Source: Perkinsus chesapeaki ATCC PRA-425
Lineage: Eukaryota; Protista; Perkinsozoa
Reading direction: 5' to 3'
DNA length: 64,000 bases
Assembly: GCA_013115145.1 (NCBI GenBank)
Contig: JAAPAO010000020.1
Coordinates: 1-64,000, forward strand
The notes beneath the pieces were generated by a model that ran no database searches, was not told the origin of the DNA, and saw only the letters and a list, made by a program, of their open reading frames with translations. The translations under genes were made by a program, and so were the position numbers. The first letter of the stretch is position 1, and the number at the start of each line of letters is the position of its first letter. Below are positions 5,087 through 33,185 of the stretch, one piece after another.

Positions 5087-5945
5087 CTATCCAGTATGAT
5101 CAAAATGCGCCGCAGCTGCTGCCGGGGCCTCGGGCGGCAGGAGCCGATGCTGCTGCTGCTGTTGCCGTTGCTGTCCCAATTCTATCATTTGATTGTGTAC
5201 ATCAAAGTAAGAAGCATGTGCCTCGAGACACAGTCGAGCATCCTTCAGAGACTCAGCGGTCGATGCCAACAACACTATAAACCGATCATCATAACCGTAG
5301 TCGCAATATTTGATGGAATCCTGTAAAATACCAAGAAATACCGAGCCCAGGAATCGAACCCACGCCCTCCTATTAGTACCAGTCTAGCTGTCTTGGCAAC
5401 CTCTTCCAACCACCGACCATCTGGGCCTGTTATGTATCGGTCAAAGACTCTGGACACTGGTGATGTTGCTGATGATGACGATGCTGCCGATGGGACTGCT
5501 CGCTCATACAACCGATCTATAGGAATACGCAACTTCTTCAGCTCAGTTGCTGCCAAATATCCCTGAAAAGATAACCCTCAAAAGTCCACCACAAAAATAT
5601 ATGCATTCCCATGGACAATACAACACATTCCTGAGCCCTCTTTACTAGACGACAACCCAGCAGTCGTATTAGTAGACTTTCACTTCCCCCCTTCTACGTT
5701 CAAGTTACTCCTATTCGCCCCCCCTACTCTATTACCTCGAAGACAGTTCTCTCTTTGGAACTGCTTATCTTCCATCCCTTAATAACTGCCTTTTCAAGCT
5801 TCTTCTCCTTCCTCCCTTTAGACCGTGAACTTGCCAATACCCAATCGCTCGAGCATCCAGAATCCATGTCTATCGAAGTGACCGATGCTGCTGACACCCT
5901 CCCTATTCTGGCCGATGATGACCCCTTGTGGTCTCGACCAAACAT
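5087..5945 (-). CDS. Multi-exon hypothetical protein with a KH-like GxxG segment
   Basis: Exons MFGRDHKG..., ...FDRYITGPDGRWLEEVAKTARL | intron 5321-5379 | DSIKYCDYGYDDRF...HFDHTG*; the splice restores the frame. Confidence 0.5.
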
Positions 5946-24800: not shown

Positions 24801-26774
24801 TCAGAGACTAACACAATACTTCTAGTGGCGATGGAAATGGATAATAATATAGGCCATCCCATAGGCCGATGACCATCAGATGATCGATGCTAGTAGCATA
24901 CTGGGTATTCAACGGGCACATATCACATAAGAAGCTGCAATGGGAGGATCAATCTAATGGAGCTTGCTCAATGGGCTGCTCAAGGATATTTGAAGACTAT
25001 AAGGCGGGTTCGAATAAGTATCTATTTCGAATGTACGGTACAGTTTCATGATGCAAGATACACAATAGGTTGATAGACAACCCTTACCATGGAAGACATC
25101 CTAAGCCTAAGCTGAAATAGATTTCCTTTCATAGACTATGTAACTGACACCATCTCTAATGCGTTCACAGTCCTATCTGTAATGCTACTATATTCCTCCC
25201 ATCGATGCTTATAACGTGGTTCAAGCTAAAGATGCTGCCAGACACATGTAGACGTTCCTTTGGATAACATTCCATGGTCAAGGTGAGGGCATTTCAATCG
25301 AAATCCTCTCACGTCATTTACAACTCAGAATCGATCCCCACATGCTTCATACAGTATACCGTCGAAAGGAGGAGGCAGGTGGTGATGAACACTATTTTTC
25401 TCGCGCGCCACGAAACTCCACTCGCGTGAAGGAGGGCGGAGATAGTCCTTAGGCATCTGATGATGATAACCTCGACAATGATACCAGCTCTGGGTAATAT
25501 GCTCATACCGCTCCTTCATCAGTATTCATCGATCTATGGGTTACCCTCTCAGGTATCTTCACAGTAATTACTCTGTTGGAAGGCAATGAGGATGGTGTCG
25601 TATACAAATCGGATGACATAACGGTAATATATACGTTATCGGATGGTCCTTACTCTATAATGGAGATTGAAAAGTATAGTGGACAGTGAACGGAGTCGCT
25701 GAATTTCACTGCTAATTTGCGCTATCTCCATCGCTTTCAATTACCATGGCGGGACCTTTGCTGTGCTACCTTATCTGTGGCGCTTCGTTGAGCGTTCGAA
25801 TGACGTTTTTATGGTGGCGAGGTCGTCGGCCTGGAGGCTGCCCTCCTCCAGAACCCCTTGAATCAAGACAATCTTAGACGGCCAGAACCGATCAAAACTA
25901 ATTGAGCTAATATTTGGCCGTCATTGCGGCCCGACTTAAAGCTTGAATAAGTACTAAGTAAATCAAAACCTGTGAAAATCAAGGCTAAAATCAAGTGTGA
26001 ATTAGCTCTACAGTATACCATGATCCGTATGAATGCATCACTCGACACTGTTATATGGGTACGGAGTCGCAAGTCTACTTTATACAACGGAGGCTTTGGA
26101 GGGGTCTGTTAGTAAACAATGAGGTGTGCGAACCTACGTACTAAATAATATTAGCATACTGAAGTGATAACCTAGGCTACGGTGAGTACACCATTTAGTT
26201 ACCTATTTCTGGATCAACGGCAGATCTAGATGCCCTACGAGCCAGGATACGGGACCTCGAGAATGGTCCAGCTCGAACGGCTCTCGAAGGTGTTACCGGC
26301 AAACTATTCACTGAAGATATCAAGCGGGAATATAATGGCAGACGGTTATACGATCAGTGGTAGTATCCAACACAGAGGGACTCTGTATAAAGATTTGTAG
26401 GTCGGATGAAGAGGTAGTGGACGGGGAGACAAATTGCACAAAGGATCCTTGCTGTGAGTGGTGGCAGCAGTGTTGGATGTGATCTCTTTACCTAAGCTTT
26501 AATAGGCTTATAGAAATTCCATGCTCTAAAGCAGGCCGGGATCCTGCCAAGTCAGTAATTTCCTTCCCTAATTTAGGCGAGTCTTCGTGTATCCACACGA
26601 AGCGGACCGCTGCATACACCTCTGCCAGCGGTGTATGACTACCCCGTAGGGCCCCATGGGTTACTGCTGTCAGTCTTTAAGGATACCAAACACTTCGATT
26701 GCAATTGCAAAATGAGCATTTGTTTTTCGATCTGCATCGTGATGGAGACCGTGACGATCTCTTCATCGATTAAG

Positions 26775-28748
26775 GTACCAAGTGGATAGCAATTACGACC
26801 ATAGCGGATGCGACACCAGACGGTGTCAAAGTTGCCGCTGATGTGATGCTATCTACGGGGGAGTGGTAGTAGGCGTGGGGCACCGCCTGGCTTGGGTACC
26901 CACCGTAGGTGCATGGTCATTGCCGGGGACAAGAAAGGTCCTAGGGAAATGTGGGCAGATTTGAAACAGCATCCTATGGGATCGATGATAGTCTTCTTGA
27001 GTGATGATGAGCAGGTGGCTGTCGGGGGCGAATTTGCAGTAGGAAGTCGGCCAAGGGGATCGTGAAGACATGGATGTCAGGAGAAGCTACCTTGGAAGCA
27101 TTTTGGGCGGAAAAACGTGGCATACTTGTAGACCTCAAACGAATATTTTTCGAGGACCACGGTTCAACCTAAGATACGCACTGGTTCATGGAGCGGAGAA
27201 AATCCTGGATCTCGATGACGATAATATAGTCTATCCCGATTCCATCGATGACATCACCAATGGCACCTTCACCAGCCGCTGTACCCCCCCCCCCTCCTAC
27301 CCTATCACGCCGCCCACTCTCCCAACAGGTTGTCCAGAAAACCATGCTTACACGGTTTCGCCGACAGCAGCCCGCCCAAGCGTTTTTAACCCCTACAGTG
27401 AGCGGCCAAGGAGCTTTCGTGAGTAGGAGTGTGTTAGGCACAGGAATGGCAAATCTAGAGGGGGAAGTATTGTGGCCGAGAGGCTTCCCTTTGCGATACA
27501 TTAAACGGCCACACGCGACAAGTATAACGAGGCGAATACCGCTGACTGGTGGTGTAGGAGGCTGAGCGCTAAGAGCATGAGTGAAGCTTAGATACACCCA
27601 AGGTCGCTGTGGTGCAGACACTAGCCGACCATGATCCTGATTTCGATGCTATATACAGGCTAACTCGTACCGCTCCTTCCTCAACTCTTAGGTTCACCCC
27701 CCCCCATCAGGCCCACTGCCAGCCGATTTCCATCAGCTAGCCGCACCTGCATTTATCCTTCAGTCAACAGTCTTCACTCCACTTAACGCTCAAGCATGCC
27801 TATTTAAAGACTATGACGCTCTATGGGGCCTCTATCTCCCCGTTACAGTACTCGCGTCACCACCCTCTATCACCACCCACAGTGTCAGGTCCATGGCCGA
27901 GTTAGTGACATCTGGCGTGGTTTCGTAAGACATTAACGATTGTGCCACCAGTAGGGCTGGAACAGGTCCTTCAGAGGCTTCTATGGGACATAGGAGCTTC
28001 GGTGGCAGTAGCTGGGCGAACTTGGGTTAAACAGATTAGAAACTCTCATGACTACCTTGGTGACTTCATTGCTGAGGAGAATGTAGAGATATTGGCAAGG
28101 AGGGGCTGATAGGCAGGCGATAGGTATATGAGAAGTCTGAGGTTATGATGAGATTCCTCACCACGTGGCAGCCGACTGCCAGTAGCACCCCATTCATGTC
28201 CTTCCCGATGCGTATGACAGATACACTGCCCGGCAGGCTAGAGGAAGCCTATATTGAGCTCTTCAGTAGAGGATTTGTAGAGGAAGATGAGGTAGTAGCC
28301 TTGTGCGAGATTACTGCTATTGGCAGCCATTAGGAAGTACCGAGATAATCTCCCTGAATCTCGCTGAAATTTCGGCGAGATTTCATACCTTTATGGTTGG
28401 TATGAAAGTAGGCGTGAAGTTATATGGCGGGGTAGGAAAGTACTTCTTTTCTTATTACCGAAAAGCTGTAAAAGAAGGCGCTTAGAATTTCCCTCATCGA
28501 AAGCCCTTGTTCCTAAGCCCCCTGCACCACCACCTATTAACATGGCCTGTCAGGTCTACCACGTTCAGCGATGGATCAATGCCTTCACATCAGCAGGGTA
28601 TAAGTAATGTCTGCACAGTCCTAATCATACCAAGACAGGTATCGGTGGCCATCAATAGTGGCATTCCATCACGGTAAAGATGCGACTAATGAGACGGGAG
28701 CTGCCCAGGCCCAGCCCAGTGGACCGCCTCCAGCTCACTTCTGCGATG
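26775..28748 (+). CDS. DUF288/STELLO-like (GT75-related) glycosyltransferase-like domain, multi-exon; 5' exons extend upstream; one +1 frameshift at 27697-27704
   Basis: Spliced motifs in family order: KWIAITTI, LPWKHFGRKNVAYL, YALVHGAEKILDLDDDN, VFNPY, LWPRGFPL, VQTLADHDPDFDAIYRL, FTPLNAQ, LWGLYLPVT, RVSDIWRG, QRLLWDIG, QIRNSHDYLGDF, RGFVEEDEVYHVQRWINAFTSAGYRWP. Confidence 0.85.
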
Positions 28749-28875
28749 GTACGTCGTCCAGGGGTGCTCGTCTACTTGCTGCATTTCACGGCGTTTCCGG
28801 GCGTTCTGGGAGTTCACATACGATGAACGCTCGGGAGGTTTTGGATGGCAAGAACCTTTACGGTAGTTATTCCAG

Positions 28876-30476
28876 GCACAACACGTCGAACAGTGCGAGT
28901 ATGGATAACAGGGATCAATGGCATGATAGGCTCCAGTCTTGCCAAGGCTTTGGTACACCGCTGCACCTTAACGCTGTTAGCGGTCCTCCCTTACAGATCG
29001 GCCTTACGAAGGACCCTAATGGCCCATGTTACGCTGTGTTTGGTATGGTACGCTATCGGGCCAATTTGGGCAATCTAGCTGGTGTTATGGACAATGTCAC
29101 TCTTACCTATGGTGATCTTACAGATGCCCAACGAGTTGGCCAGATCGTTCGGGGTAGGTAGGATATGCCGTAGGGGCGGAGGGTTTGGTCAGAGGTCCGC
29201 CCTCATTTGGTGTTCCACTTCGCCGCCCAAGGCATCAATGGGGTATCTTTCCAGTCAGAGTCGTTGACATACAAGTCCAACGTAATGGTGACATACACAC
29301 AGAAATGGAGGACTTGCCTGGTTCAGGTGGAGGGCACATCAAATGTTCTCCAAGCCTTAAGGCGCACTGGAGCTCGGGTTCTAGTCGCCAGCAGTAGTAC
29401 CGTGTACGGCAGTAAGCTGCATTGTGAGCTGTTCGAAAGTTAAGGCGTTAATAGGCACCTCTGATAGCCCTGAGTATATTGGTAAACCCATACCAGAGTC
29501 GGCACCAATGGGACCAGTATCGCCCTATGGTGTCAGTAAGGCGGCCACTGAGATGATATGCCTACAGCAGCATAAGGCCCATGGTACACTATCCAAGATT
29601 GGGCCTGCTGCTGCTGCTGCTCGGAGGCCCCCCTCCTCCTCCACCACCTCGTCAGGCACACACTGTGTGGCAGTACGGCTGTTTATACATGTGTCGCCGG
29701 GCGGGACTGAAGCTCTGGCCCTCCAGGAGTTCTGTCGGCAAGTTGCCATGATCGAAGGAGGGAAGCAGGAACCTGTTATCAAGTCGGACAGCCTTCCGCC
29801 CATTGCGAGTATCGTCCCTAAGGGGATGATGCCTCATCAATTCGATGCTCTCGGATAGACCGCTTCCATAGGGAAACGTCCGTATAACACTATGGCAGGC
29901 ACGGCTCCCTGAGCACCCGACGAGACACTACCGACATAAGGGACTCTGCAATACAGCTTATCAAAGTAACCTGAAGATTAGGTTGCTTGGCATCACCATT
30001 ACCTAGCTCCTGGAGGCCTCCGATCCCGGTGAAGTTTACAATGTAGGGAGTTACCTCCCTGAGACGAGCGACGAGCGAGAGCCAGGCCCGCCACGCCACA
30101 CTGGGGTTTGCTCGTTCGACTTTGTGGTGACGGCAGACTAGTCGCTCAGGTGGTATCCACGGAGGAGCTGCTGCACCTTGTACTGTCCGAATCTCCAATT
30201 GGGGGAAGGATCGAGCTTAGACAGGATGCGAGTCGGATGAGAGCCTATGATGAGGCTGTGCTCATCGCTAATAACACAAAGGTTGAACGTCGCCTTGTCG
30301 ATTGGAAGAGAATAAGAATCTTTCAGCTGCGTAACTTGACTGGGTGGGTGCCGGCCAATGATATACGGCAGACCGTACGGGATGTCCTGGAGTACTGGCG
30401 AGGGGAAGTGTCACGGCGATACCCGGACGCCAAGACAGACCACTGGGAATCATCTGTAGATCCTGACGACCTGTAG
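28876..30476 (+). CDS. NAD-dependent NDP-sugar epimerase/reductase (extended SDR, GMD/RMD-like scaffold), multi-exon; probably the C-terminal domain of the preceding gene
   Basis: VWITGINGMIG (GxxGxxG), YGDLTD, FHFAAQ, ASSSTVYG, SPYGVSK (YxxxK), HGSLSTRRDTTDIRD, GEVYNVG, LTGWVP...VLEYWR. Confidence 0.9.
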
Positions 30477-30815
30477 TCACTAGTTTGCTGCCTCTAATGG
30501 GCGGGTCATGCAATATTGCTGCCGGTAGAGTCTCTAGTTGTATGTGGTGTGGCAGTTGAGTTCAGTTAAAGGTGGCTAGTTCTAAGATGGGGCACACCGT
30601 ACTTGCAGTGGCAATACAGTAGAGTTCCATCTCCAGTTCGCGGATAGCTATCTCTCCAGCTCCTGCGCAGTAATGGCTTCGACTGCGCTTTGATTGGGTC
30701 TAGTATGTCTTGTAGTACTTCCATAACGAATGGCATTGCTTCTGCAGCGCCGAGTGACCCTTCCTCTGCGTCCACTAGGCGCCCGATGTCTGACTGATGG
30801 CCCCCTGCCCAGTCA

Positions 30816-31555
30816 TGGCAAAGCTGTATGGATGTTCAAGGACAAGCCACACACGATGGCTGACAGACGCATACGGCCGTCGACACTTAAGAACAGATCC
30901 ACCCAGAAGAAGTACGTCTTCTAGGGCGGACCGTTGGGCCTACAGCCGGTGATGTCAGTTGGCCCTACCACAAGACCAAGTACTTTTCAAAAACTTTCTA
31001 TCAGACAGACTTCAACAACCCAACTCTCGACAAGTCCAATACGAAGATCCACATTGTTTATGAGCCCTTTGTCGGTAGGCGGCGGCGCTCTCACCAACGA
31101 TGCCTACCAGACCGATCCTCCCTCAGAAACCGATGTCTACTTCACCTTGCGGAATGCCCTCCAGCGTGCCTACCCTGGCATAGGAGTGACAGGTGCGTGA
31201 TAGCTGCACTGGTGTTGTAGAGAGCTGTCAGGTGAGGGCTTCTCGACATCATCGGATAAGGGATGGTTTAAGATCTATCGAATGAATGACAAGAGAGTCC
31301 TCTTCTGCGCACAGCCACAGTCGATGACTCCGGACAAGGTAACTGAGTGCGCCTTTGCAGCTCGAATTGTAGGTCCCTTCAGGCCAAGGAAATGGGCCGG
31401 ACCTATGATAGAGATTCGCCGGTCATTGCCGGGCTCCAGCCAGGTAACTCACGGCATCACTGGCACTCCGACCTAGGCCTTGGCTCATTCCAGATGATTT
31501 AGTGACGGACATGCAAGCTTTCCGTAGACTTCTCATGGCTGTCGGGGAGTGGTGA
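30816..31555 (+). CDS. Rdx/SelW-fold-like protein without a CxxC/CxxU motif, multi-exon (5' start and last splices uncertain)
   Basis: Spliced KIHIVYEPF|TDPPSETDVYFTLRNALQRAYPGIGVT|GEGFSTSSDKGWFKIYRMNDKRVLF and a final DMQAFRRLLMAV helix parallel the SelW beta-alpha-beta-beta-beta-alpha pattern. Confidence 0.45.
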
Positions 31556-31572
31556 CAGAAGCCTGTGCTTCC

Positions 31573-33185
31573 ATGGTGACGTTTCTGCAATCTCGTGGAA
31601 GCCGTTGTGTTTTCCTACACGAGGATCACTTTCCCCTCAGCATGGACAGATCTCATTCCCTTACCCATGTGGTGCCCCAAGAAGATCTCTTACAGCAGCA
31701 GCAGCAGCCGCCCTTGCATGCCGAGCAGCGGCGGCACCCAGTCTTGGAGGAAGGGGGACTGACGAAGTGGGCCGCAGATGCCCGAGCGGCGCTTTCGGCC
31801 TTCAGCGGTTTCTCCAAGAACGTCACGGTCCCCGCGGATCCAACCATGCGGATTGATACACCAGATACTGCTGACGATATCCAGTTCCCCTCCCTCATGA
31901 CCGAGGCGGTTAGAGTCGTTGATCGATGTATTGAAGACGACACCGAGCCGCCCACCTTGGCCGAGCTCCGACAGCAGAGGGCGCGGAGAGTAGAACATCT
32001 CGCCTCGGAGAGACTCAAGCGAAAGCACGGCGGCGGGGAAGGTGTGCAGCCATTCCGTCACGATTATACCGTTCGAGGGACAGTAAGGAAGACTACGCTG
32101 ATCAAAAGGATTAAGAGTGCACTGCCGTCGGAGTACAGTAGTATAGTTAAGAACGCCGAAGAAGATCTTTCTGTTGAGGAGGGCCTGCACAGGATGCCTG
32201 ATAAAAGCGAAGTGATAATATCGGTGGATGTTTACACAACTGATCAGAGGAGTTTCCGACGGAACGACCACTACGAGTCGATAGACATCCTAGGCAGTCA
32301 AACGTTAAAGGAGCTCCGAGACTCCTTCTGCTTCACATGCGATGAACTTTACGATGGTCCGTTCTACGCCAGGTCTGCTTGTTTTGTGATAGGCCATTGG
32401 GTCTATACTGATTTGCCTGATAACCCTGGAAGGCGAGAGAAGTAAGTCAGTCCCTCCGCCACAAGGTGCCCGTGATGATGCTGATTCAGGGTGGTTAATT
32501 ATGAGGAGCATATCCGAAACTGGCTGCGAGTCCATGACGACTCCATCGAGCCTGAAGCACGACAGTCACTCCCCGAGATCCATTTTGCCGAGATGCAATC
32601 GACGACCGTTAGTCAAGCGTAAGCGGCTTTGATGGCGTACCGTTGCAGGATATTTTCGTCAGCGTGGAGCGGCTGTATCGGTTGTCCCCAAATGGCCACT
32701 CCCAGTGTTGCTTCTATCTCCATTATACCGACCAAGAGGAGAGGATCTACTTCACAAATGTCACATTGCTTGACAGTCGTGTACATTCCCTAGTAGGCCT
32801 GTATCACTGCTATGCCTGTTCATCGACAAGTGGCATTCAGATTCGCCAAGTTTACCCGCTGAAGACTTTCCGCCGGCAGAAGCTCAACCTGACTTTATGC
32901 GCGGTTAGTAAGTGTCGTTTAGTCCTATTAATATCTTTGTTGGTCTCAGTTATGCAATGCAGCCTACGCTAACGTTGTGGTGTTGAATGACCCTATACTG
33001 TCCAACAATCCCATGTACTGCTGTCAAAAATGTTACCAACACATTCGGACGGATAGAGACGGAAGGATTATTCCACCAAACTTGAGAGGTAACACCGCTT
33101 GCTTTTCTCCCACTAATAATGGCTCGTCATTGAAGGTCCGGATACAACTGGCCAGGTGGTGAGCACCTTCAGATACGTTCAATAG
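31573..33185 (+). CDS. SNAPC3: snRNA-activating protein complex subunit 3 (SNAP50)-like; ATG at 31573 or 31642
   Basis: LGSQTLKELRDSFCFTCD, SACFVIGHWVYTDL, YPLKTFRRQK, and C-terminal zinc finger NDPILSNNPMYCCQKCYQHIRTDRDG. Confidence 0.8.

What the first reader, a model, noticed from the sequence alone, without database searches (positions are those of the whole stretch)
26775..30476. Apparent gene fusion: STELLO/DUF288 (GT75-like) domain joined to an NDP-sugar epimerase/reductase
Seen: the DUF288 tail (...EEDE|VYHVQRWINAFTSAG|YRWPSIV) continues without a stop into a Pro/Ala linker. A strong donor G|GTACGT at 28749 and an acceptor TTCCAG| at 28875 join it in phase to G-TTRRTVRVWITGINGMIG, the SDR Rossmann strand. 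Known: Arabidopsis STELLO proteins are Golgi GT75-related proteins, GT75/RGP includes UDP-arabinopyranose mutases with a DDD motif (DDDN is present here), and plant UDP-Araf synthesis uses a separate SDR 4-epimerase plus a mutase. Inference: one polypeptide may couple nucleotide-sugar interconversion to transfer or mutase chemistry for a surface or wall glycan. I do not know of this fusion being described.
Basis: partly seen in the sequence, partly recalled or inferred. Interest (0 to 1): 0.8.

Follow-up and report, generated by a model that had tools for sequence, protein, structure and literature searches.

The report
STELLO-like domain fused to sugar reductase
This Perkinsus gene very probably encodes one protein that joins a STELLO/GT75-like sugar-handling domain to a GDP-sugar reductase-like enzyme, a pairing that also occurs in many other protists and giant-virus-like contigs but whose chemistry nobody has tested.

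Summary
The window is Perkinsus chesapeaki. Exons of a STELLO/DUF288-like domain (26775-28748) are followed by exons of an extended SDR (28876-30476). A GT..AG intron at 28749-28875 joins them in phase.

That join alone proves little: 22 of 78 GT-AG pairs at the junction also give open in-frame joins. The GenBank model that uses it also wrongly splices out the stop codon and absorbs the next gene. The real support is comparative:
- P. olseni and P. marinus keep a phase-1 intron at the same place.
- The linker has no stop before that intron in any of the three species.
- P. olseni has no possible start codon for a separate SDR.
- The same two-domain order occurs as uninterrupted ORFs in about 15 other protein clusters from protists and giant-virus-like contigs.

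The SDR is closest to Rmd, a GDP-sugar reductase, not to a UDP-sugar 4-epimerase. The N-terminal domain is closest to MtdL, a GT75 GDP-sugar pyranose-furanose mutase. Relatives carry N-terminal signal anchors, so the protein is probably lumenal.

No RNA data were available, and I found no paper on this fusion. It is a new variant of known kinds, of moderate interest.

The parts
25552..25650 (+). Candidate upstream exon with a hydrophobic stretch (..FIDLWVTLSGIFTVITLLEG..), a possible signal anchor. The start codon was not found.
   Evidence: This block is conserved with P. marinus L003 at about 2784. It also matches the N-terminus of P. olseni model P0164..RILSTVAFLEVVSNSDD... The evidence is weak and the boundaries are unknown.
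26199..26453 (+). Two stem-region exons (26199-26344 and 26401-26453). They carry the conserved motif GVTGKLFTEDIKREY (26298-26333).
   Evidence: They map exactly to P0001. The region is conserved in P. marinus, score 103. A G-x-L-F...I-R/K motif follows the signal anchor in other fused relatives.
26775..28597 (+). Twelve exons of the STELLO/DUF288-like, GT75-related domain. Motifs: GDKKGP 26925-26942, WKHFGRKN 27093-27116, DDDN 27214-27225, WPRGFPL 27473-27493, DPDFD 27633-27647, NAQ 27785-27793, HGRVSDIWR 27892-27918, VKQIRNSH 28026-28049.
   Evidence: Pfam STELLO scores 37.4 bits against a cut-off of 27.8. The domain is 37-42% identical over about 380 aa to STELLO-family proteins. The family alignment is A1. 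The AF2 model has pLDDT 87. Foldseek and profile searches both match MtdL.
28639..28748 (+). Last STELLO-domain residues (YRWPSIV) plus a Pro/Ala-rich linker. There is no stop codon.
   Evidence: The orthologous linker exons in P. marinus and P. olseni are also open and in the same phase.
28749..28875 (+). Junction intron, GTACGTCG...TTATTCCAG, 127 nt, phase 1. It contains the in-frame ATG at 28845.
   Evidence: The acceptor CAG|GCAC is conserved in all three Perkinsus species. The intron is longer than the gene's median of 44.5 nt. The donor is not uniquely determined.
28876..30476 (+). Ten exons of an Rmd-like extended SDR. Motifs: GINGMIG 28911-28931, SSSTVYG 29390-29410, YGVSK 29526-29540, RRDTTDIRD 29918-29944. 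The stop TAG is at 30474-30476.
   Evidence: Pfam GDP_Man_Dehyd scores 169.8 bits over model positions 2-331 of 332. The PDB match to Rmd 2pk3 has E 2.3e-39 over the full length.
30814..32969 (+). Neighbouring SNAPC3-like gene. It is wrongly merged into GenBank model KAF4677120.1 and is not part of the feature.
   Evidence: The model's 'intron' 30473-30812 removes the TAG stop. SNAPC3 is a separate gene in P. marinus and P. olseni. Pfam SNAPC3 matches P0001 residues 1175-1337.

Best explanation
One Perkinsus chesapeaki gene, from upstream of 26199 to 30476 on the + strand with at least 25 exons, encodes a single two-domain protein of at least 845 aa.

N-terminal half. This is a STELLO-family, GT75-related GT-A domain. 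It keeps the DDDN metal/nucleotide motif, the arginine of WPRGFPL that is the sugar-accepting nucleophile in GT75 mutases, and the Asp, Gln and Arg residues that hold the sugar and beta-phosphate in MtdL.

C-terminal half. This is a complete extended SDR of the GDP-sugar branch, closest to Rmd (GDP-4-keto-6-deoxy-D-mannose reductase). It has GxxGxxG, Ser and YxxxK. It has Thr where GMD, DdahA and Rmd have the Glu used for dehydration, so it is more likely a 4-keto reductase than a 4,6-dehydratase.

Inferred mechanism. The SDR makes or finishes a GDP-6-deoxyhexose. The tethered GT75-like domain uses it at once. It either transfers the sugar to an acceptor, as is presumed for plant STELLO, or passes it through an Arg-sugar adduct to the furanose form, as MtdL and Hyg20 do with GDP-L-fucose.

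Location. Nearly all relatives, and a P. olseni model of the same gene, begin with a signal anchor. The protein is therefore probably a type II membrane protein acting in the ER/Golgi lumen.

Shown here: the gene structure, domain identities, motif conservation and recurrence of the architecture.
Inferred: expression as one mRNA, the substrate, the reaction and the location.

Rough odds:
- single fused protein: 0.9
- GDP-sugar chemistry in both halves: 0.6
- N-terminal domain, given that it acts on an NDP-sugar: transfer about 0.45, mutase or autoglycosylation about 0.4
For: Gene structure
- A phase-1 intron sits immediately before the Rossmann exon in all three species: P. chesapeaki 127 nt, P. 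olseni 47 nt, P. marinus 41 nt. The acceptor CAG|GCAC is conserved.
- The linker exons are 109, 112 and 133 nt. All are 1 mod 3 and have no stop before the donor, while the linker sequence itself has diverged.
- In P. olseni the SDR frame has a stop 15 codons upstream of the acceptor and no ATG before the glycine-rich loop. The SDR there cannot start on its own.

Recurrence
- STELLO plus GDP_Man_Dehyd occurs in uninterrupted ORFs: P0034 (a 799-aa ORF at 48-2447 of a 2545-nt contig), P0014, P0018, P0008, P0016, P0024 (Prymnesium MAG), P0035 and P0162-P0168.
- P0008 and P0016 carry the GT domain plus two SDR domains.
- All fused and signal-anchored SDRs form one starred clade, separate from about 310-aa stand-alone proteins.

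Domains
- SDR: Rmd 2pk3 E 2.3e-39; DdahA 7us5 E 1.5e-35; GMDs about 1e-17. The motifs are listed.
- GT domain: AF2 pLDDT 87. Foldseek matches MtdL at E 3e-21 with TM 0.72-0.76, and rice UAM2 at E 8e-12. The family profile matches MtdL at E 1.2e-33, with DDDN, R159, D195, Q229, R257, D260, R289 and H292 aligned to invariant or nearly invariant family columns.
- The roles of those residues are taken from PMC9937993.
- Thr13, which helps MtdL select guanine and is Pro in UDP-using RGPs, is Thr in the STELLO-like family.

Topology
- N-terminal hydrophobic anchors are present in P0034, P0014, P0008, P0035 and most unfused relatives, and in P. olseni model P0164.
- Plant STELLO is a type II protein facing the Golgi lumen (PMC4906169).
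Against: - No transcript evidence. No RNA run holds the stretch, and the two runs laid gave no coverage.
- All Perkinsus proteins in the databases are gene predictions. The P. chesapeaki model demonstrably over-merges at its 3' end.
- In P. chesapeaki and P. marinus an in-frame ATG lies inside the junction intron (28845; L003 5195), so an SDR-only isoform is not excluded there.
- The junction intron is three times the usual length, and many alternative splices also work.
- In the GT-domain tree the fused forms are scattered (at least 6 changes forced by starred branches, quick tree) and Perkinsus sits on its own long branch. Inheritance of the fusion from a fused ancestor is therefore not shown.
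- Two residues essential or metal-binding in MtdL differ across the whole STELLO-like family: D87 is Phe and H287 is Gln.
- In Arabidopsis STL1 the arginine mutant R271A still complements.
- No NCBIfam equivalog cut-off is reached by the SDR, so its substrate is inferred only from its nearest relatives.
- The P. chesapeaki start codon and anchor exon were not found.
Confidence: 0.6

Rival explanations
1. Two adjacent, separately expressed genes. A STELLO-like gene ends in or just after the linker, and an SDR gene starts at the ATG at 28845 (MARTFTVVIPGTTRR...). Gene predictors have merged them.
For: The same GenBank model wrongly merges the downstream SNAPC3 gene by splicing out a stop. In-frame ATGs exist in the junction in P. 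chesapeaki (28845) and P. marinus (5195). In-frame joinability is common here, at 22 of 78 pairs. There are no RNA data. In P. marinus and P. olseni an unspliced STELLO frame would reach a stop 19-26 codons past the donors tested (5139 in P. marinus).
Against: P. olseni has no ATG between the upstream stop and the GxxGxxG loop. In P. chesapeaki the STELLO frame has no stop for 137 codons past the donor. Phase, acceptor sequence and linker length modulo 3 are conserved in three species. The same domain order occurs in continuous ORFs in many other lineages.
Confidence: 0.08
2. The fusion is real, but the N-terminal domain is a true NDP-sugar pyranose-furanose mutase. The protein would then be a two-step synthase of a GDP-6-deoxyhexofuranose donor, not a transferase.
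For: The closest characterised relatives, MtdL, Hyg20 and the UAMs, are all mutases, and the bacterial ones act on GDP-L-Fuc and GDP-L-Gal. The nucleophile Arg, the base Asp260, Asp195, Gln229, Arg257 and the DDD motif are all conserved. Ser228 is Ala here, but active AtRGP2 has Gly at that position and MtdL S228A keeps about 21% activity.
Against: Asp87 is Phe, and D87N and D87S abolish MtdL activity. The Mn ligand His287 is Gln, and that His is also lost in inactive AtRGP5. The Arg is dispensable for Arabidopsis STL1 function. No Pfam RGP match was reported at E<=0.5.
Confidence: 0.3
3. The fusion is real, but the SDR is a 4,6-dehydratase or epimerase acting on another nucleotide sugar, for example a GDP-heptose or a UDP-sugar. 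In that case the product is not a rhamnose-type 6-deoxyhexose.
For: The second-best PDB match is a GDP-heptose 4,6-dehydratase at E 1.5e-35. No NCBIfam equivalog cut-off is met, and LegB, gmd and galE models score alike at about 89-94 bits. Triple-domain relatives carry two Rmd-like SDRs, and one of these may be the dehydratase.
Against: The Glu of the S-x-E dehydratase motif is Thr in Perkinsus and in the whole eukaryote clade. UDP-glucose 4-epimerases score about 1e-13 or worse. The GDP_Man_Dehyd Pfam model is the top hit and matches over its full length.
Confidence: 0.2

Closest known systems
Arabidopsis STELLO1/2 (Pfam PF03385, DUF288). These are Golgi-lumenal type II GT-like proteins needed for assembly of cellulose synthase complexes (PMC4906169).
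   Same: The conserved core is the same: GDKK, RKN-GYL, DDDN, WPRGFPL, DPDxDAIYRLT, NAQ and DIWR. Both aspartate motifs that are essential in STL1 are present. Relatives carry N-terminal signal anchors.
   Different: Only positions 1-116 of the 387-position Pfam model are matched, and an SDR follows where the plant C-terminal region would be. I did not align an Arabidopsis sequence directly. Neither the donor sugar nor the acceptor of any STELLO protein is known.
MtdL and Hyg20, bacterial GT75 GDP-L-galactose/GDP-L-fucose pyranose-furanose mutases (PDB 7xpr and others; PMC9937993), and the plant UAM/RGP proteins (8cid).
   Same: The fold matches (TM 0.72-0.76) and the family profile matches at E 1e-33. 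The DDDN motif, nucleophile Arg159, Asp195, Gln229, Arg257, Asp260, Arg289 and His292 are conserved. The guanine-side Thr13 is also conserved. In the bacterial pathways these mutases work downstream of GDP-6-deoxyhexose SDR enzymes (my own knowledge of the hygromycin A and A201A pathways).
   Different: Several MtdL residues differ: Asp87 is Phe, His287 is Gln, Ser86 is His, Asn42 is Lys and Ser228 is Ala. Identity is about 21%. The Perkinsus protein is probably membrane-anchored and lumenal rather than soluble. It is fused to the SDR rather than encoded by a separate gene in a cluster.
Rmd, GDP-4-keto-6-deoxy-D-mannose reductase (Aneurinibacillus 2pk3, Pseudomonas 6x3b), which makes GDP-D-rhamnose.
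   Same: It is the best solved relative and aligns over its full length (E 2.3e-39). It shares GxxGxxG, Ser, YxxxK, the F-x-H-x-x-P-G-x loop and the RD-x-x-D-V/I-RD substrate motif.
   Different: Perkinsus has Thr where Rmd has Glu before the Y-G. Identity is modest. It has N-terminal extensions and fusions, and it belongs to a separate eukaryote/virus clade. Its activity is untested.
Other bifunctional nucleotide-sugar proteins: yeast Gal10 (epimerase-mutarotase, 1z45), ArnA, plant RHM, and the Golgi-lumenal type II SDRs of plants (UXS, GAE, MUR4). These are cited from my own knowledge, apart from 1z45, which is listed.
   Same: The logic is the same: an SDR nucleotide-sugar step is tethered to the next step, or an SDR is anchored in the Golgi lumen.
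   Different: None of them pairs an SDR with a GT75/STELLO-type domain.

Membership tests
STELLO / DUF288 (PF03385) | A Pfam PF03385 match above the gathering score. | tested here: met
   The match scores 37.4 bits against a cut-off of 27.8 for P0001:79-490, but covers only model positions 1-116 of 387. Stand-alone protist 'STELLO' proteins show the same partial match.
STELLO / DUF288 (PF03385) | Full-length similarity of the GT core to proteins that sources name STELLO. | tested here: met
   Identity is 42% over about 380 aa to the Plasmodiophora 'STELLO glycosyltransferase' P0172, and 33% to the Porphyridium 'STELLO1' P0267. All 13 invariant family columns are kept.
STELLO / DUF288 (PF03385) | The two aspartate motifs needed for STL1 function (DD205-206 and DVD297-299). 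| tested here: inconclusive
   DDDN (27214-27225) and DPDFD (27633-27647) are present and lie in nearly invariant or invariant family columns. Their equivalence to the Arabidopsis numbering is inferred from the motifs, not from a direct alignment.
STELLO / DUF288 (PF03385) | An N-terminal signal anchor with type II lumenal topology. | tested here: inconclusive
   The P. chesapeaki 5' exons are unresolved. A hydrophobic block lies at about 25552. P. olseni model P0164 and most fused relatives do have an anchor.
STELLO / DUF288 (PF03385) | The C-terminal region of the plant proteins (Pfam model positions about 117-387). | tested here: not met
   This region is not matched. The SDR follows after a linker of about 30 residues.
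GT75 (RGP/UAM/MtdL NDP-pyranose mutases) | A GT-A plus core plus helix fold like that of MtdL. | tested here: met
   Foldseek gives E 3e-21 and TM 0.72-0.76 over about 396 columns. Rice UAM2 matches at E 8e-12.
GT75 (RGP/UAM/MtdL NDP-pyranose mutases) | The DDD motif and the conserved glycosylated arginine. | tested here: met
   DfDDDN aligns to MtdL D109-N112, and WPRGFPL aligns to FPRGFPF containing Arg159. R164 is invariant in alignment A1.
GT75 (RGP/UAM/MtdL NDP-pyranose mutases) | The other residues shown to be essential in MtdL: D87, D195, Q229, R257, D260, and the Mn ligand H287. | tested here: not met
   D195, Q229, R257 and D260 are conserved. D87 aligns to Phe and H287 aligns to Gln across the whole family.
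GT75 (RGP/UAM/MtdL NDP-pyranose mutases) | Mutase or autoglycosylation activity. | not testable with these tools
   This needs an enzyme assay.
Rmd / GMD branch of extended SDRs (PF16363) | A full-length Pfam GDP_Man_Dehyd match, with GxxGxxG and the Ser...YxxxK motif. | tested here: met
   The match scores 169.8 bits over model positions 2-331 of 332. The motifs are GINGMIG, SSSTVYG and YGVSK.
Rmd / GMD branch of extended SDRs (PF16363) | The GMD-type dehydratase Glu (S/T-x-E), or an equivalog-level match to gmd. | tested here: not met
   Thr occupies the Glu position. TIGR01472 scores 94 bits against a cut-off of 415.
Rmd / GMD branch of extended SDRs (PF16363) | Rmd activity, that is NAD(P)H reduction of GDP-4-keto-6-deoxy-D-mannose. 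| not testable with these tools
   The only evidence is the nearest solved relative, 2pk3 at E 2.3e-39.

The most novel reading that the evidence does not exclude
The fused proteins of Perkinsus, other protists and giant-virus-like contigs would be secretory-pathway synthases of a GDP-6-deoxyhexofuranose. That would make them the first eukaryotic GDP-sugar pyranose-furanose mutases, working directly on the product of their own Rmd-like domain. More broadly, the fusion would act as a 'Rosetta stone' showing that the whole STELLO family, plant STELLO1/2 included, works on GDP-linked 6-deoxy sugars. The STELLO substrate has been unknown since 2016.
Probability: 0.25. Interest if true: 0.75.

Novelty: new variant of a known kind. 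Interest (0 to 1): 0.55.

Why it matters
STELLO proteins are required for cellulose synthase assembly in plants, yet their donor sugar, acceptor and reaction are unknown. Here the same domain is tethered again and again to a GDP-sugar SDR, sometimes to two of them. Its nearest characterised relative is a GDP-sugar mutase. Together these give a concrete, testable guess at the substrate class: GDP-6-deoxyhexoses.

For Perkinsus, a shellfish parasite, the gene marks an unstudied lumenal glycan pathway that may feed the cell wall or surface. The presence of the same architecture on giant-virus-like contigs links it to viral glycan synthesis.

There is also a practical lesson. The public P. chesapeaki model is chimeric with SNAPC3 and lacks its true 5' end. 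The P. marinus model is a fragment named 'UDP-glucose 4-epimerase'.

Tried and rejected
- RNA evidence. The look-up of sequencing runs found no holder of the stretch. The two same-species runs laid on 26700-30600 gave zero coverage. I drew no conclusion from this.
- Single-exon Pfam scans. They were too short to be useful for the STELLO part.
- Transcript-derived fragments across the junction. A word search with P0001:400-600 returned only P. olseni gene models.
- The GenBank model as support. I rejected it as independent evidence because it removes the TAG at 30474-30476 through a 340-nt 'intron' and runs into SNAPC3.
- The P. marinus donor. My first choice (5139, GTACCT) is out of phase with the conserved acceptor. 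The phase-1 donor is 5164 (GTGGGAGC), which gives a 41-nt intron.
- The start codon and anchor exon. Motif and hydropathy scans and tblastn with the P. olseni N-terminus gave only a weak block at about 25552-25650.
- The idea that the long 'SDR plus 400 aa' relatives carry the STELLO domain in reversed order. There was no BLAST or Pfam match.
- NCBIfam naming of the SDR. No model reached its cut-off.
- Literature. Searches for STELLO, DUF288, GT75, Rmd and GDP-D-rhamnose with protist terms found no description of the fusion.
- A single origin of the fusion. The quick GT-domain tree does not support it, but I ran no AU test.


Full report
**Identity of the window.** A search of protein cluster representatives with the SDR piece 29424-29855 returned P0001 as top hit. 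This is GenBank KAF4677120.1, a 'hypothetical protein' of Perkinsus chesapeaki, 1344 aa. Every block of P0001 maps exactly onto the window between 26020 and 32969. The window is therefore that assembly or one identical to it.

**Checking the observation.**
- With P0001 as a guide I derived each intron as the GT..AG pair that reproduces the protein.
- The junction intron is 28749-28875: atg|GTACGTCG ... GTTATTCCAG|gca, 127 nt, phase 1.
- Splicing it gives ...PPAHFCDGTTRRTVRVWITGINGMIG.
- DDDN lies at 27214-27225 and the stop TAG at 30474-30476.
- Joining the exons from 26199 to 30476 gives one open frame of 845 codons.
- The median intron length in this gene is 44.5 nt, so the junction intron is unusually long.

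**How much the in-phase join proves.** It proves little on its own.
- The STELLO frame stays open for 137 codons beyond the donor.
- Of 78 GT-AG pairs in the junction, 22 give stop-free in-frame joins that keep the Rossmann strand.
Its last 'intron' (30473-30812) starts inside the final CTG-TAG, removes the stop and runs into a SNAPC3-like gene.
- In P. marinus and P. olseni SNAPC3 is annotated as a separate downstream gene.
- No RNA run holds the stretch, and the two same-species runs gave no coverage.

**Comparative evidence within Perkinsus.** I fetched the orthologous loci of P. marinus (L003) and P. olseni (L004).
- In both, the exon that ends the STELLO domain begins YRWP and runs into a diverged linker without a stop.
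- A phase-1 intron follows, ending in CAG|GCAC immediately before (G/S)T(T/C/S)RR(T/V)VRVWITGINGMIG.
- The intron is 47 nt in P. olseni (5208-5254) and 41 nt in P. marinus (5164-5204). Both are ordinary lengths.
- Counted from the Y codon, the linker exons are 109, 112 and 133 nt. All are 1 mod 3, although the linker sequences barely align.
- In P. olseni the SDR reading frame has a stop 15 codons upstream of the acceptor and no ATG before the glycine-rich loop. A stand-alone SDR cannot be translated there.

**Comparative evidence outside Perkinsus.**
- Pfam finds STELLO plus GDP_Man_Dehyd, in that order, in P0008, P0014, P0016, P0018, P0024 and P0034.
- A second search added P0161 (P. olseni, 832 aa, without the SNAPC3 merge) and P0162, P0163 and P0165-P0168.
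- Most of these come from metagenome or Logan contigs on which genes are called as uninterrupted ORFs.
- For example, P0034 is a 799-aa ORF at 48-2447 of a 2545-nt contig.
- P0024 is from a Prymnesium MAG.
- BLAST shows that the whole 390-aa N-terminal domain aligns, not only the Pfam segment, at 32-39% identity. The SDR aligns at 42-47%.
- P0008 and P0016 carry the N-terminal domain followed by two SDR domains.
- Contigs L005, L006 and L002 are gene-dense with uninterrupted ORF calls. L005 has two tandem fused genes and a TFIIS-type zinc ribbon. L006 has many small ankyrin genes. L002 has GT47-, FUT8- and O-FucT-like genes. Together they look like giant-virus DNA, or DNA of a very compact eukaryote.

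**Trees.**
- In an SDR-domain tree of 119 rows, all fused SDRs, the signal-anchored unfused ones and the 'SDR plus unknown C-terminal domain' proteins form one starred clade of 43-47 rows. The roughly 310-aa stand-alone proteins fall outside it. The Perkinsus trio lies inside that clade.
- In a tree of the N-terminal domain (75 rows), the fused forms are scattered among stand-alone STELLO-like proteins. Starred branches force at least 6 changes, and Perkinsus is on its own long branch.
- Both are quick trees. I conclude that the pairing is recurrent, not that it arose once.

**The SDR.**
- The best solved relatives are Rmd of Aneurinibacillus (2pk3, E 2.3e-39, end to end), the GDP-D-glycero-D-manno-heptose 4,6-dehydratase 7us5 (E 1.5e-35) and Pseudomonas Rmd 6x3b (E 3e-29).
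- GMDs follow at about 1e-17. UDP-glucose 4-epimerases score about 1e-13 or worse.
- GINGMIG, the serine run and YGVSK are intact.
- Three residues before the G of the Y-G pair, GMD, DdahA and Rmd have Glu. Perkinsus and the whole eukaryote clade have Thr there (SSSTVYG, or SSTEYG).
- No NCBIfam equivalog cut-off is reached.
- I therefore call it an Rmd-like GDP-sugar SDR. It is more likely a 4-keto reductase than a dehydratase, and its product is unknown.

**The N-terminal domain.**
- Pfam STELLO is matched above threshold, but only for model positions 1-116. The same is true of stand-alone protist proteins named STELLO, which then end.
- A 75-sequence alignment (A1) shows the family motifs. 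Perkinsus keeps every invariant column.
- AlphaFold2 on A1 gave pLDDT 87 and pTM 0.89.
- Foldseek against the PDB put six MtdL entries first (E about 3e-21, TM 0.72-0.76) and then rice UAM2 (8cid, E 8e-12). Ordinary GT-A enzymes follow only at 1e-5.
- A profile of A1 finds MtdL by sequence at E 1.2e-33.
- MtdL is a GT75 Mn-dependent mutase that interconverts GDP-L-Gal or GDP-L-Fuc between the pyranose and furanose forms. Hyg20 does the same (PMC9937993).
- I counted positions in the printed alignment. MtdL D109-D110-D111-N112, R159 (the proposed nucleophile), D195, Q229, R257, D260, R289 and H292 align to invariant or nearly invariant family residues.
- Other MtdL positions differ in the family: R90 aligns to Lys, S228 to Ala, N42 to Lys, S86 to His, D87 to Phe and H287 (the Mn ligand) to Gln.
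- According to the paper, D87N and D87S abolish MtdL activity and H287 is lost in inactive AtRGP5. S228A keeps about a fifth of activity, and active AtRGP2 has Gly at that position.
- Thr13, which contacts guanine and is Pro in UDP-using RGPs, is Thr in the family.
- For plant STL1, the DD and DVD motifs are required but the arginine (R271A) is not.
- The domain is thus a sister family of GT75 with most of the catalytic apparatus. It fails two tested GT75 features, so I do not file it as GT75.

**Topology.**
- P0034, P0014, P0008, P0035 and most unfused SDR relatives start with a hydrophobic segment. P0016 starts with what looks like a signal peptide by eye.
- After the anchor, the fused proteins share a G-x-L-F...I-R/K motif. 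This is present in the window at 26298-26333 and in P. marinus.
- P. olseni model P0164 has an N-terminus with a hydrophobic stretch.
- A matching block lies in the window at about 25552-25650 and in P. marinus.
- I could not find the start codon. The annotated start of P0001 at 26020 has no support.

**Reading.** The most economical explanation is one type II, lumenal, two-domain enzyme. An Rmd-like SDR supplies a GDP-6-deoxyhexose to a GT75-related STELLO-like domain, which either transfers the sugar or converts it to the furanose form. The fusion itself is well supported, at about 0.9. The chemistry is inferred.

**Novelty.**
- Both domain families are known.
- The proteins are already in public databases under uninformative or wrong names.
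- I found no paper that mentions the pairing.
- It is a new variant of known kinds and is widespread rather than peculiar to Perkinsus.

Noticed in passing
window 30473-32969: GenBank model KAF4677120.1 splices out the natural TAG (30474-30476) through a 340-nt 'intron'. This fuses the SDR to a SNAPC3-like gene, which is annotated as a separate gene in P. marinus and P. olseni.
   Followed up: yes
window 25500-26460: The annotated start (ATG 26020) has no comparative support. Blocks conserved with P. marinus and P. olseni lie further upstream, at about 25552-25650 and 25818-25860, and include a hydrophobic stretch. The true first exon was not found.
   Followed up: partly
window 29584-29655: This 72-nt intron is a multiple of three and free of stops. 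If retained, it would insert a low-complexity Ala/Pro/Ser stretch into the SDR. The P. olseni intron at the same place is 61 nt, so it is a real intron.
   Followed up: partly
L005 4967-12168; L006 479-4759; L002 8001-10256: Gene-dense contigs with uninterrupted ORF calls carry the fused gene. L005 has two tandem copies plus a TFIIS-type zinc ribbon. L006 has a three-domain version beside many small ankyrin genes. L002 has it among GT47-, FUT8- and O-FucT-like genes. They look like giant-virus DNA, but I did not look for viral hallmark genes.
   Followed up: partly
P0194, P0227, P0203, P0248 (P0248): The STELLO-like domain is also fused to other glycosyltransferase domains: GT10 fucosyltransferase (PF17039 and PF00852), Galactosyl_T (PF01762), and Glyco_tranf_2_4 in a Nannochloropsis protein.
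   Followed up: no
P0010, P0015, P0032, P0036, P0040, P0042; P0014:780-1186: Signal-anchored SDRs of the same clade carry a C-terminal extension of about 400 aa with no significant Pfam match. The extra C-terminal part of P0014 gives only a weak Stealth_CR2 hit (E 0.007).
   Followed up: partly
P0020 (Namystynia karyoxenos transcript); P0137: P0020 is a tandem SDR-SDR protein with a signal anchor, from a diplonemid transcriptome. P0137 joins this SDR to a kinesin motor and may be a chimeric gene model.
   Followed up: no
L003 4001-6388 (P. marinus XP_002772156.1): The P. marinus model is a 477-aa fragment. It skips the STELLO tail, the linker and half of the glycine-rich loop, and it is named 'UDP-glucose 4-epimerase, putative'. 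The locus itself holds all the orthologous exons.
   Followed up: yes
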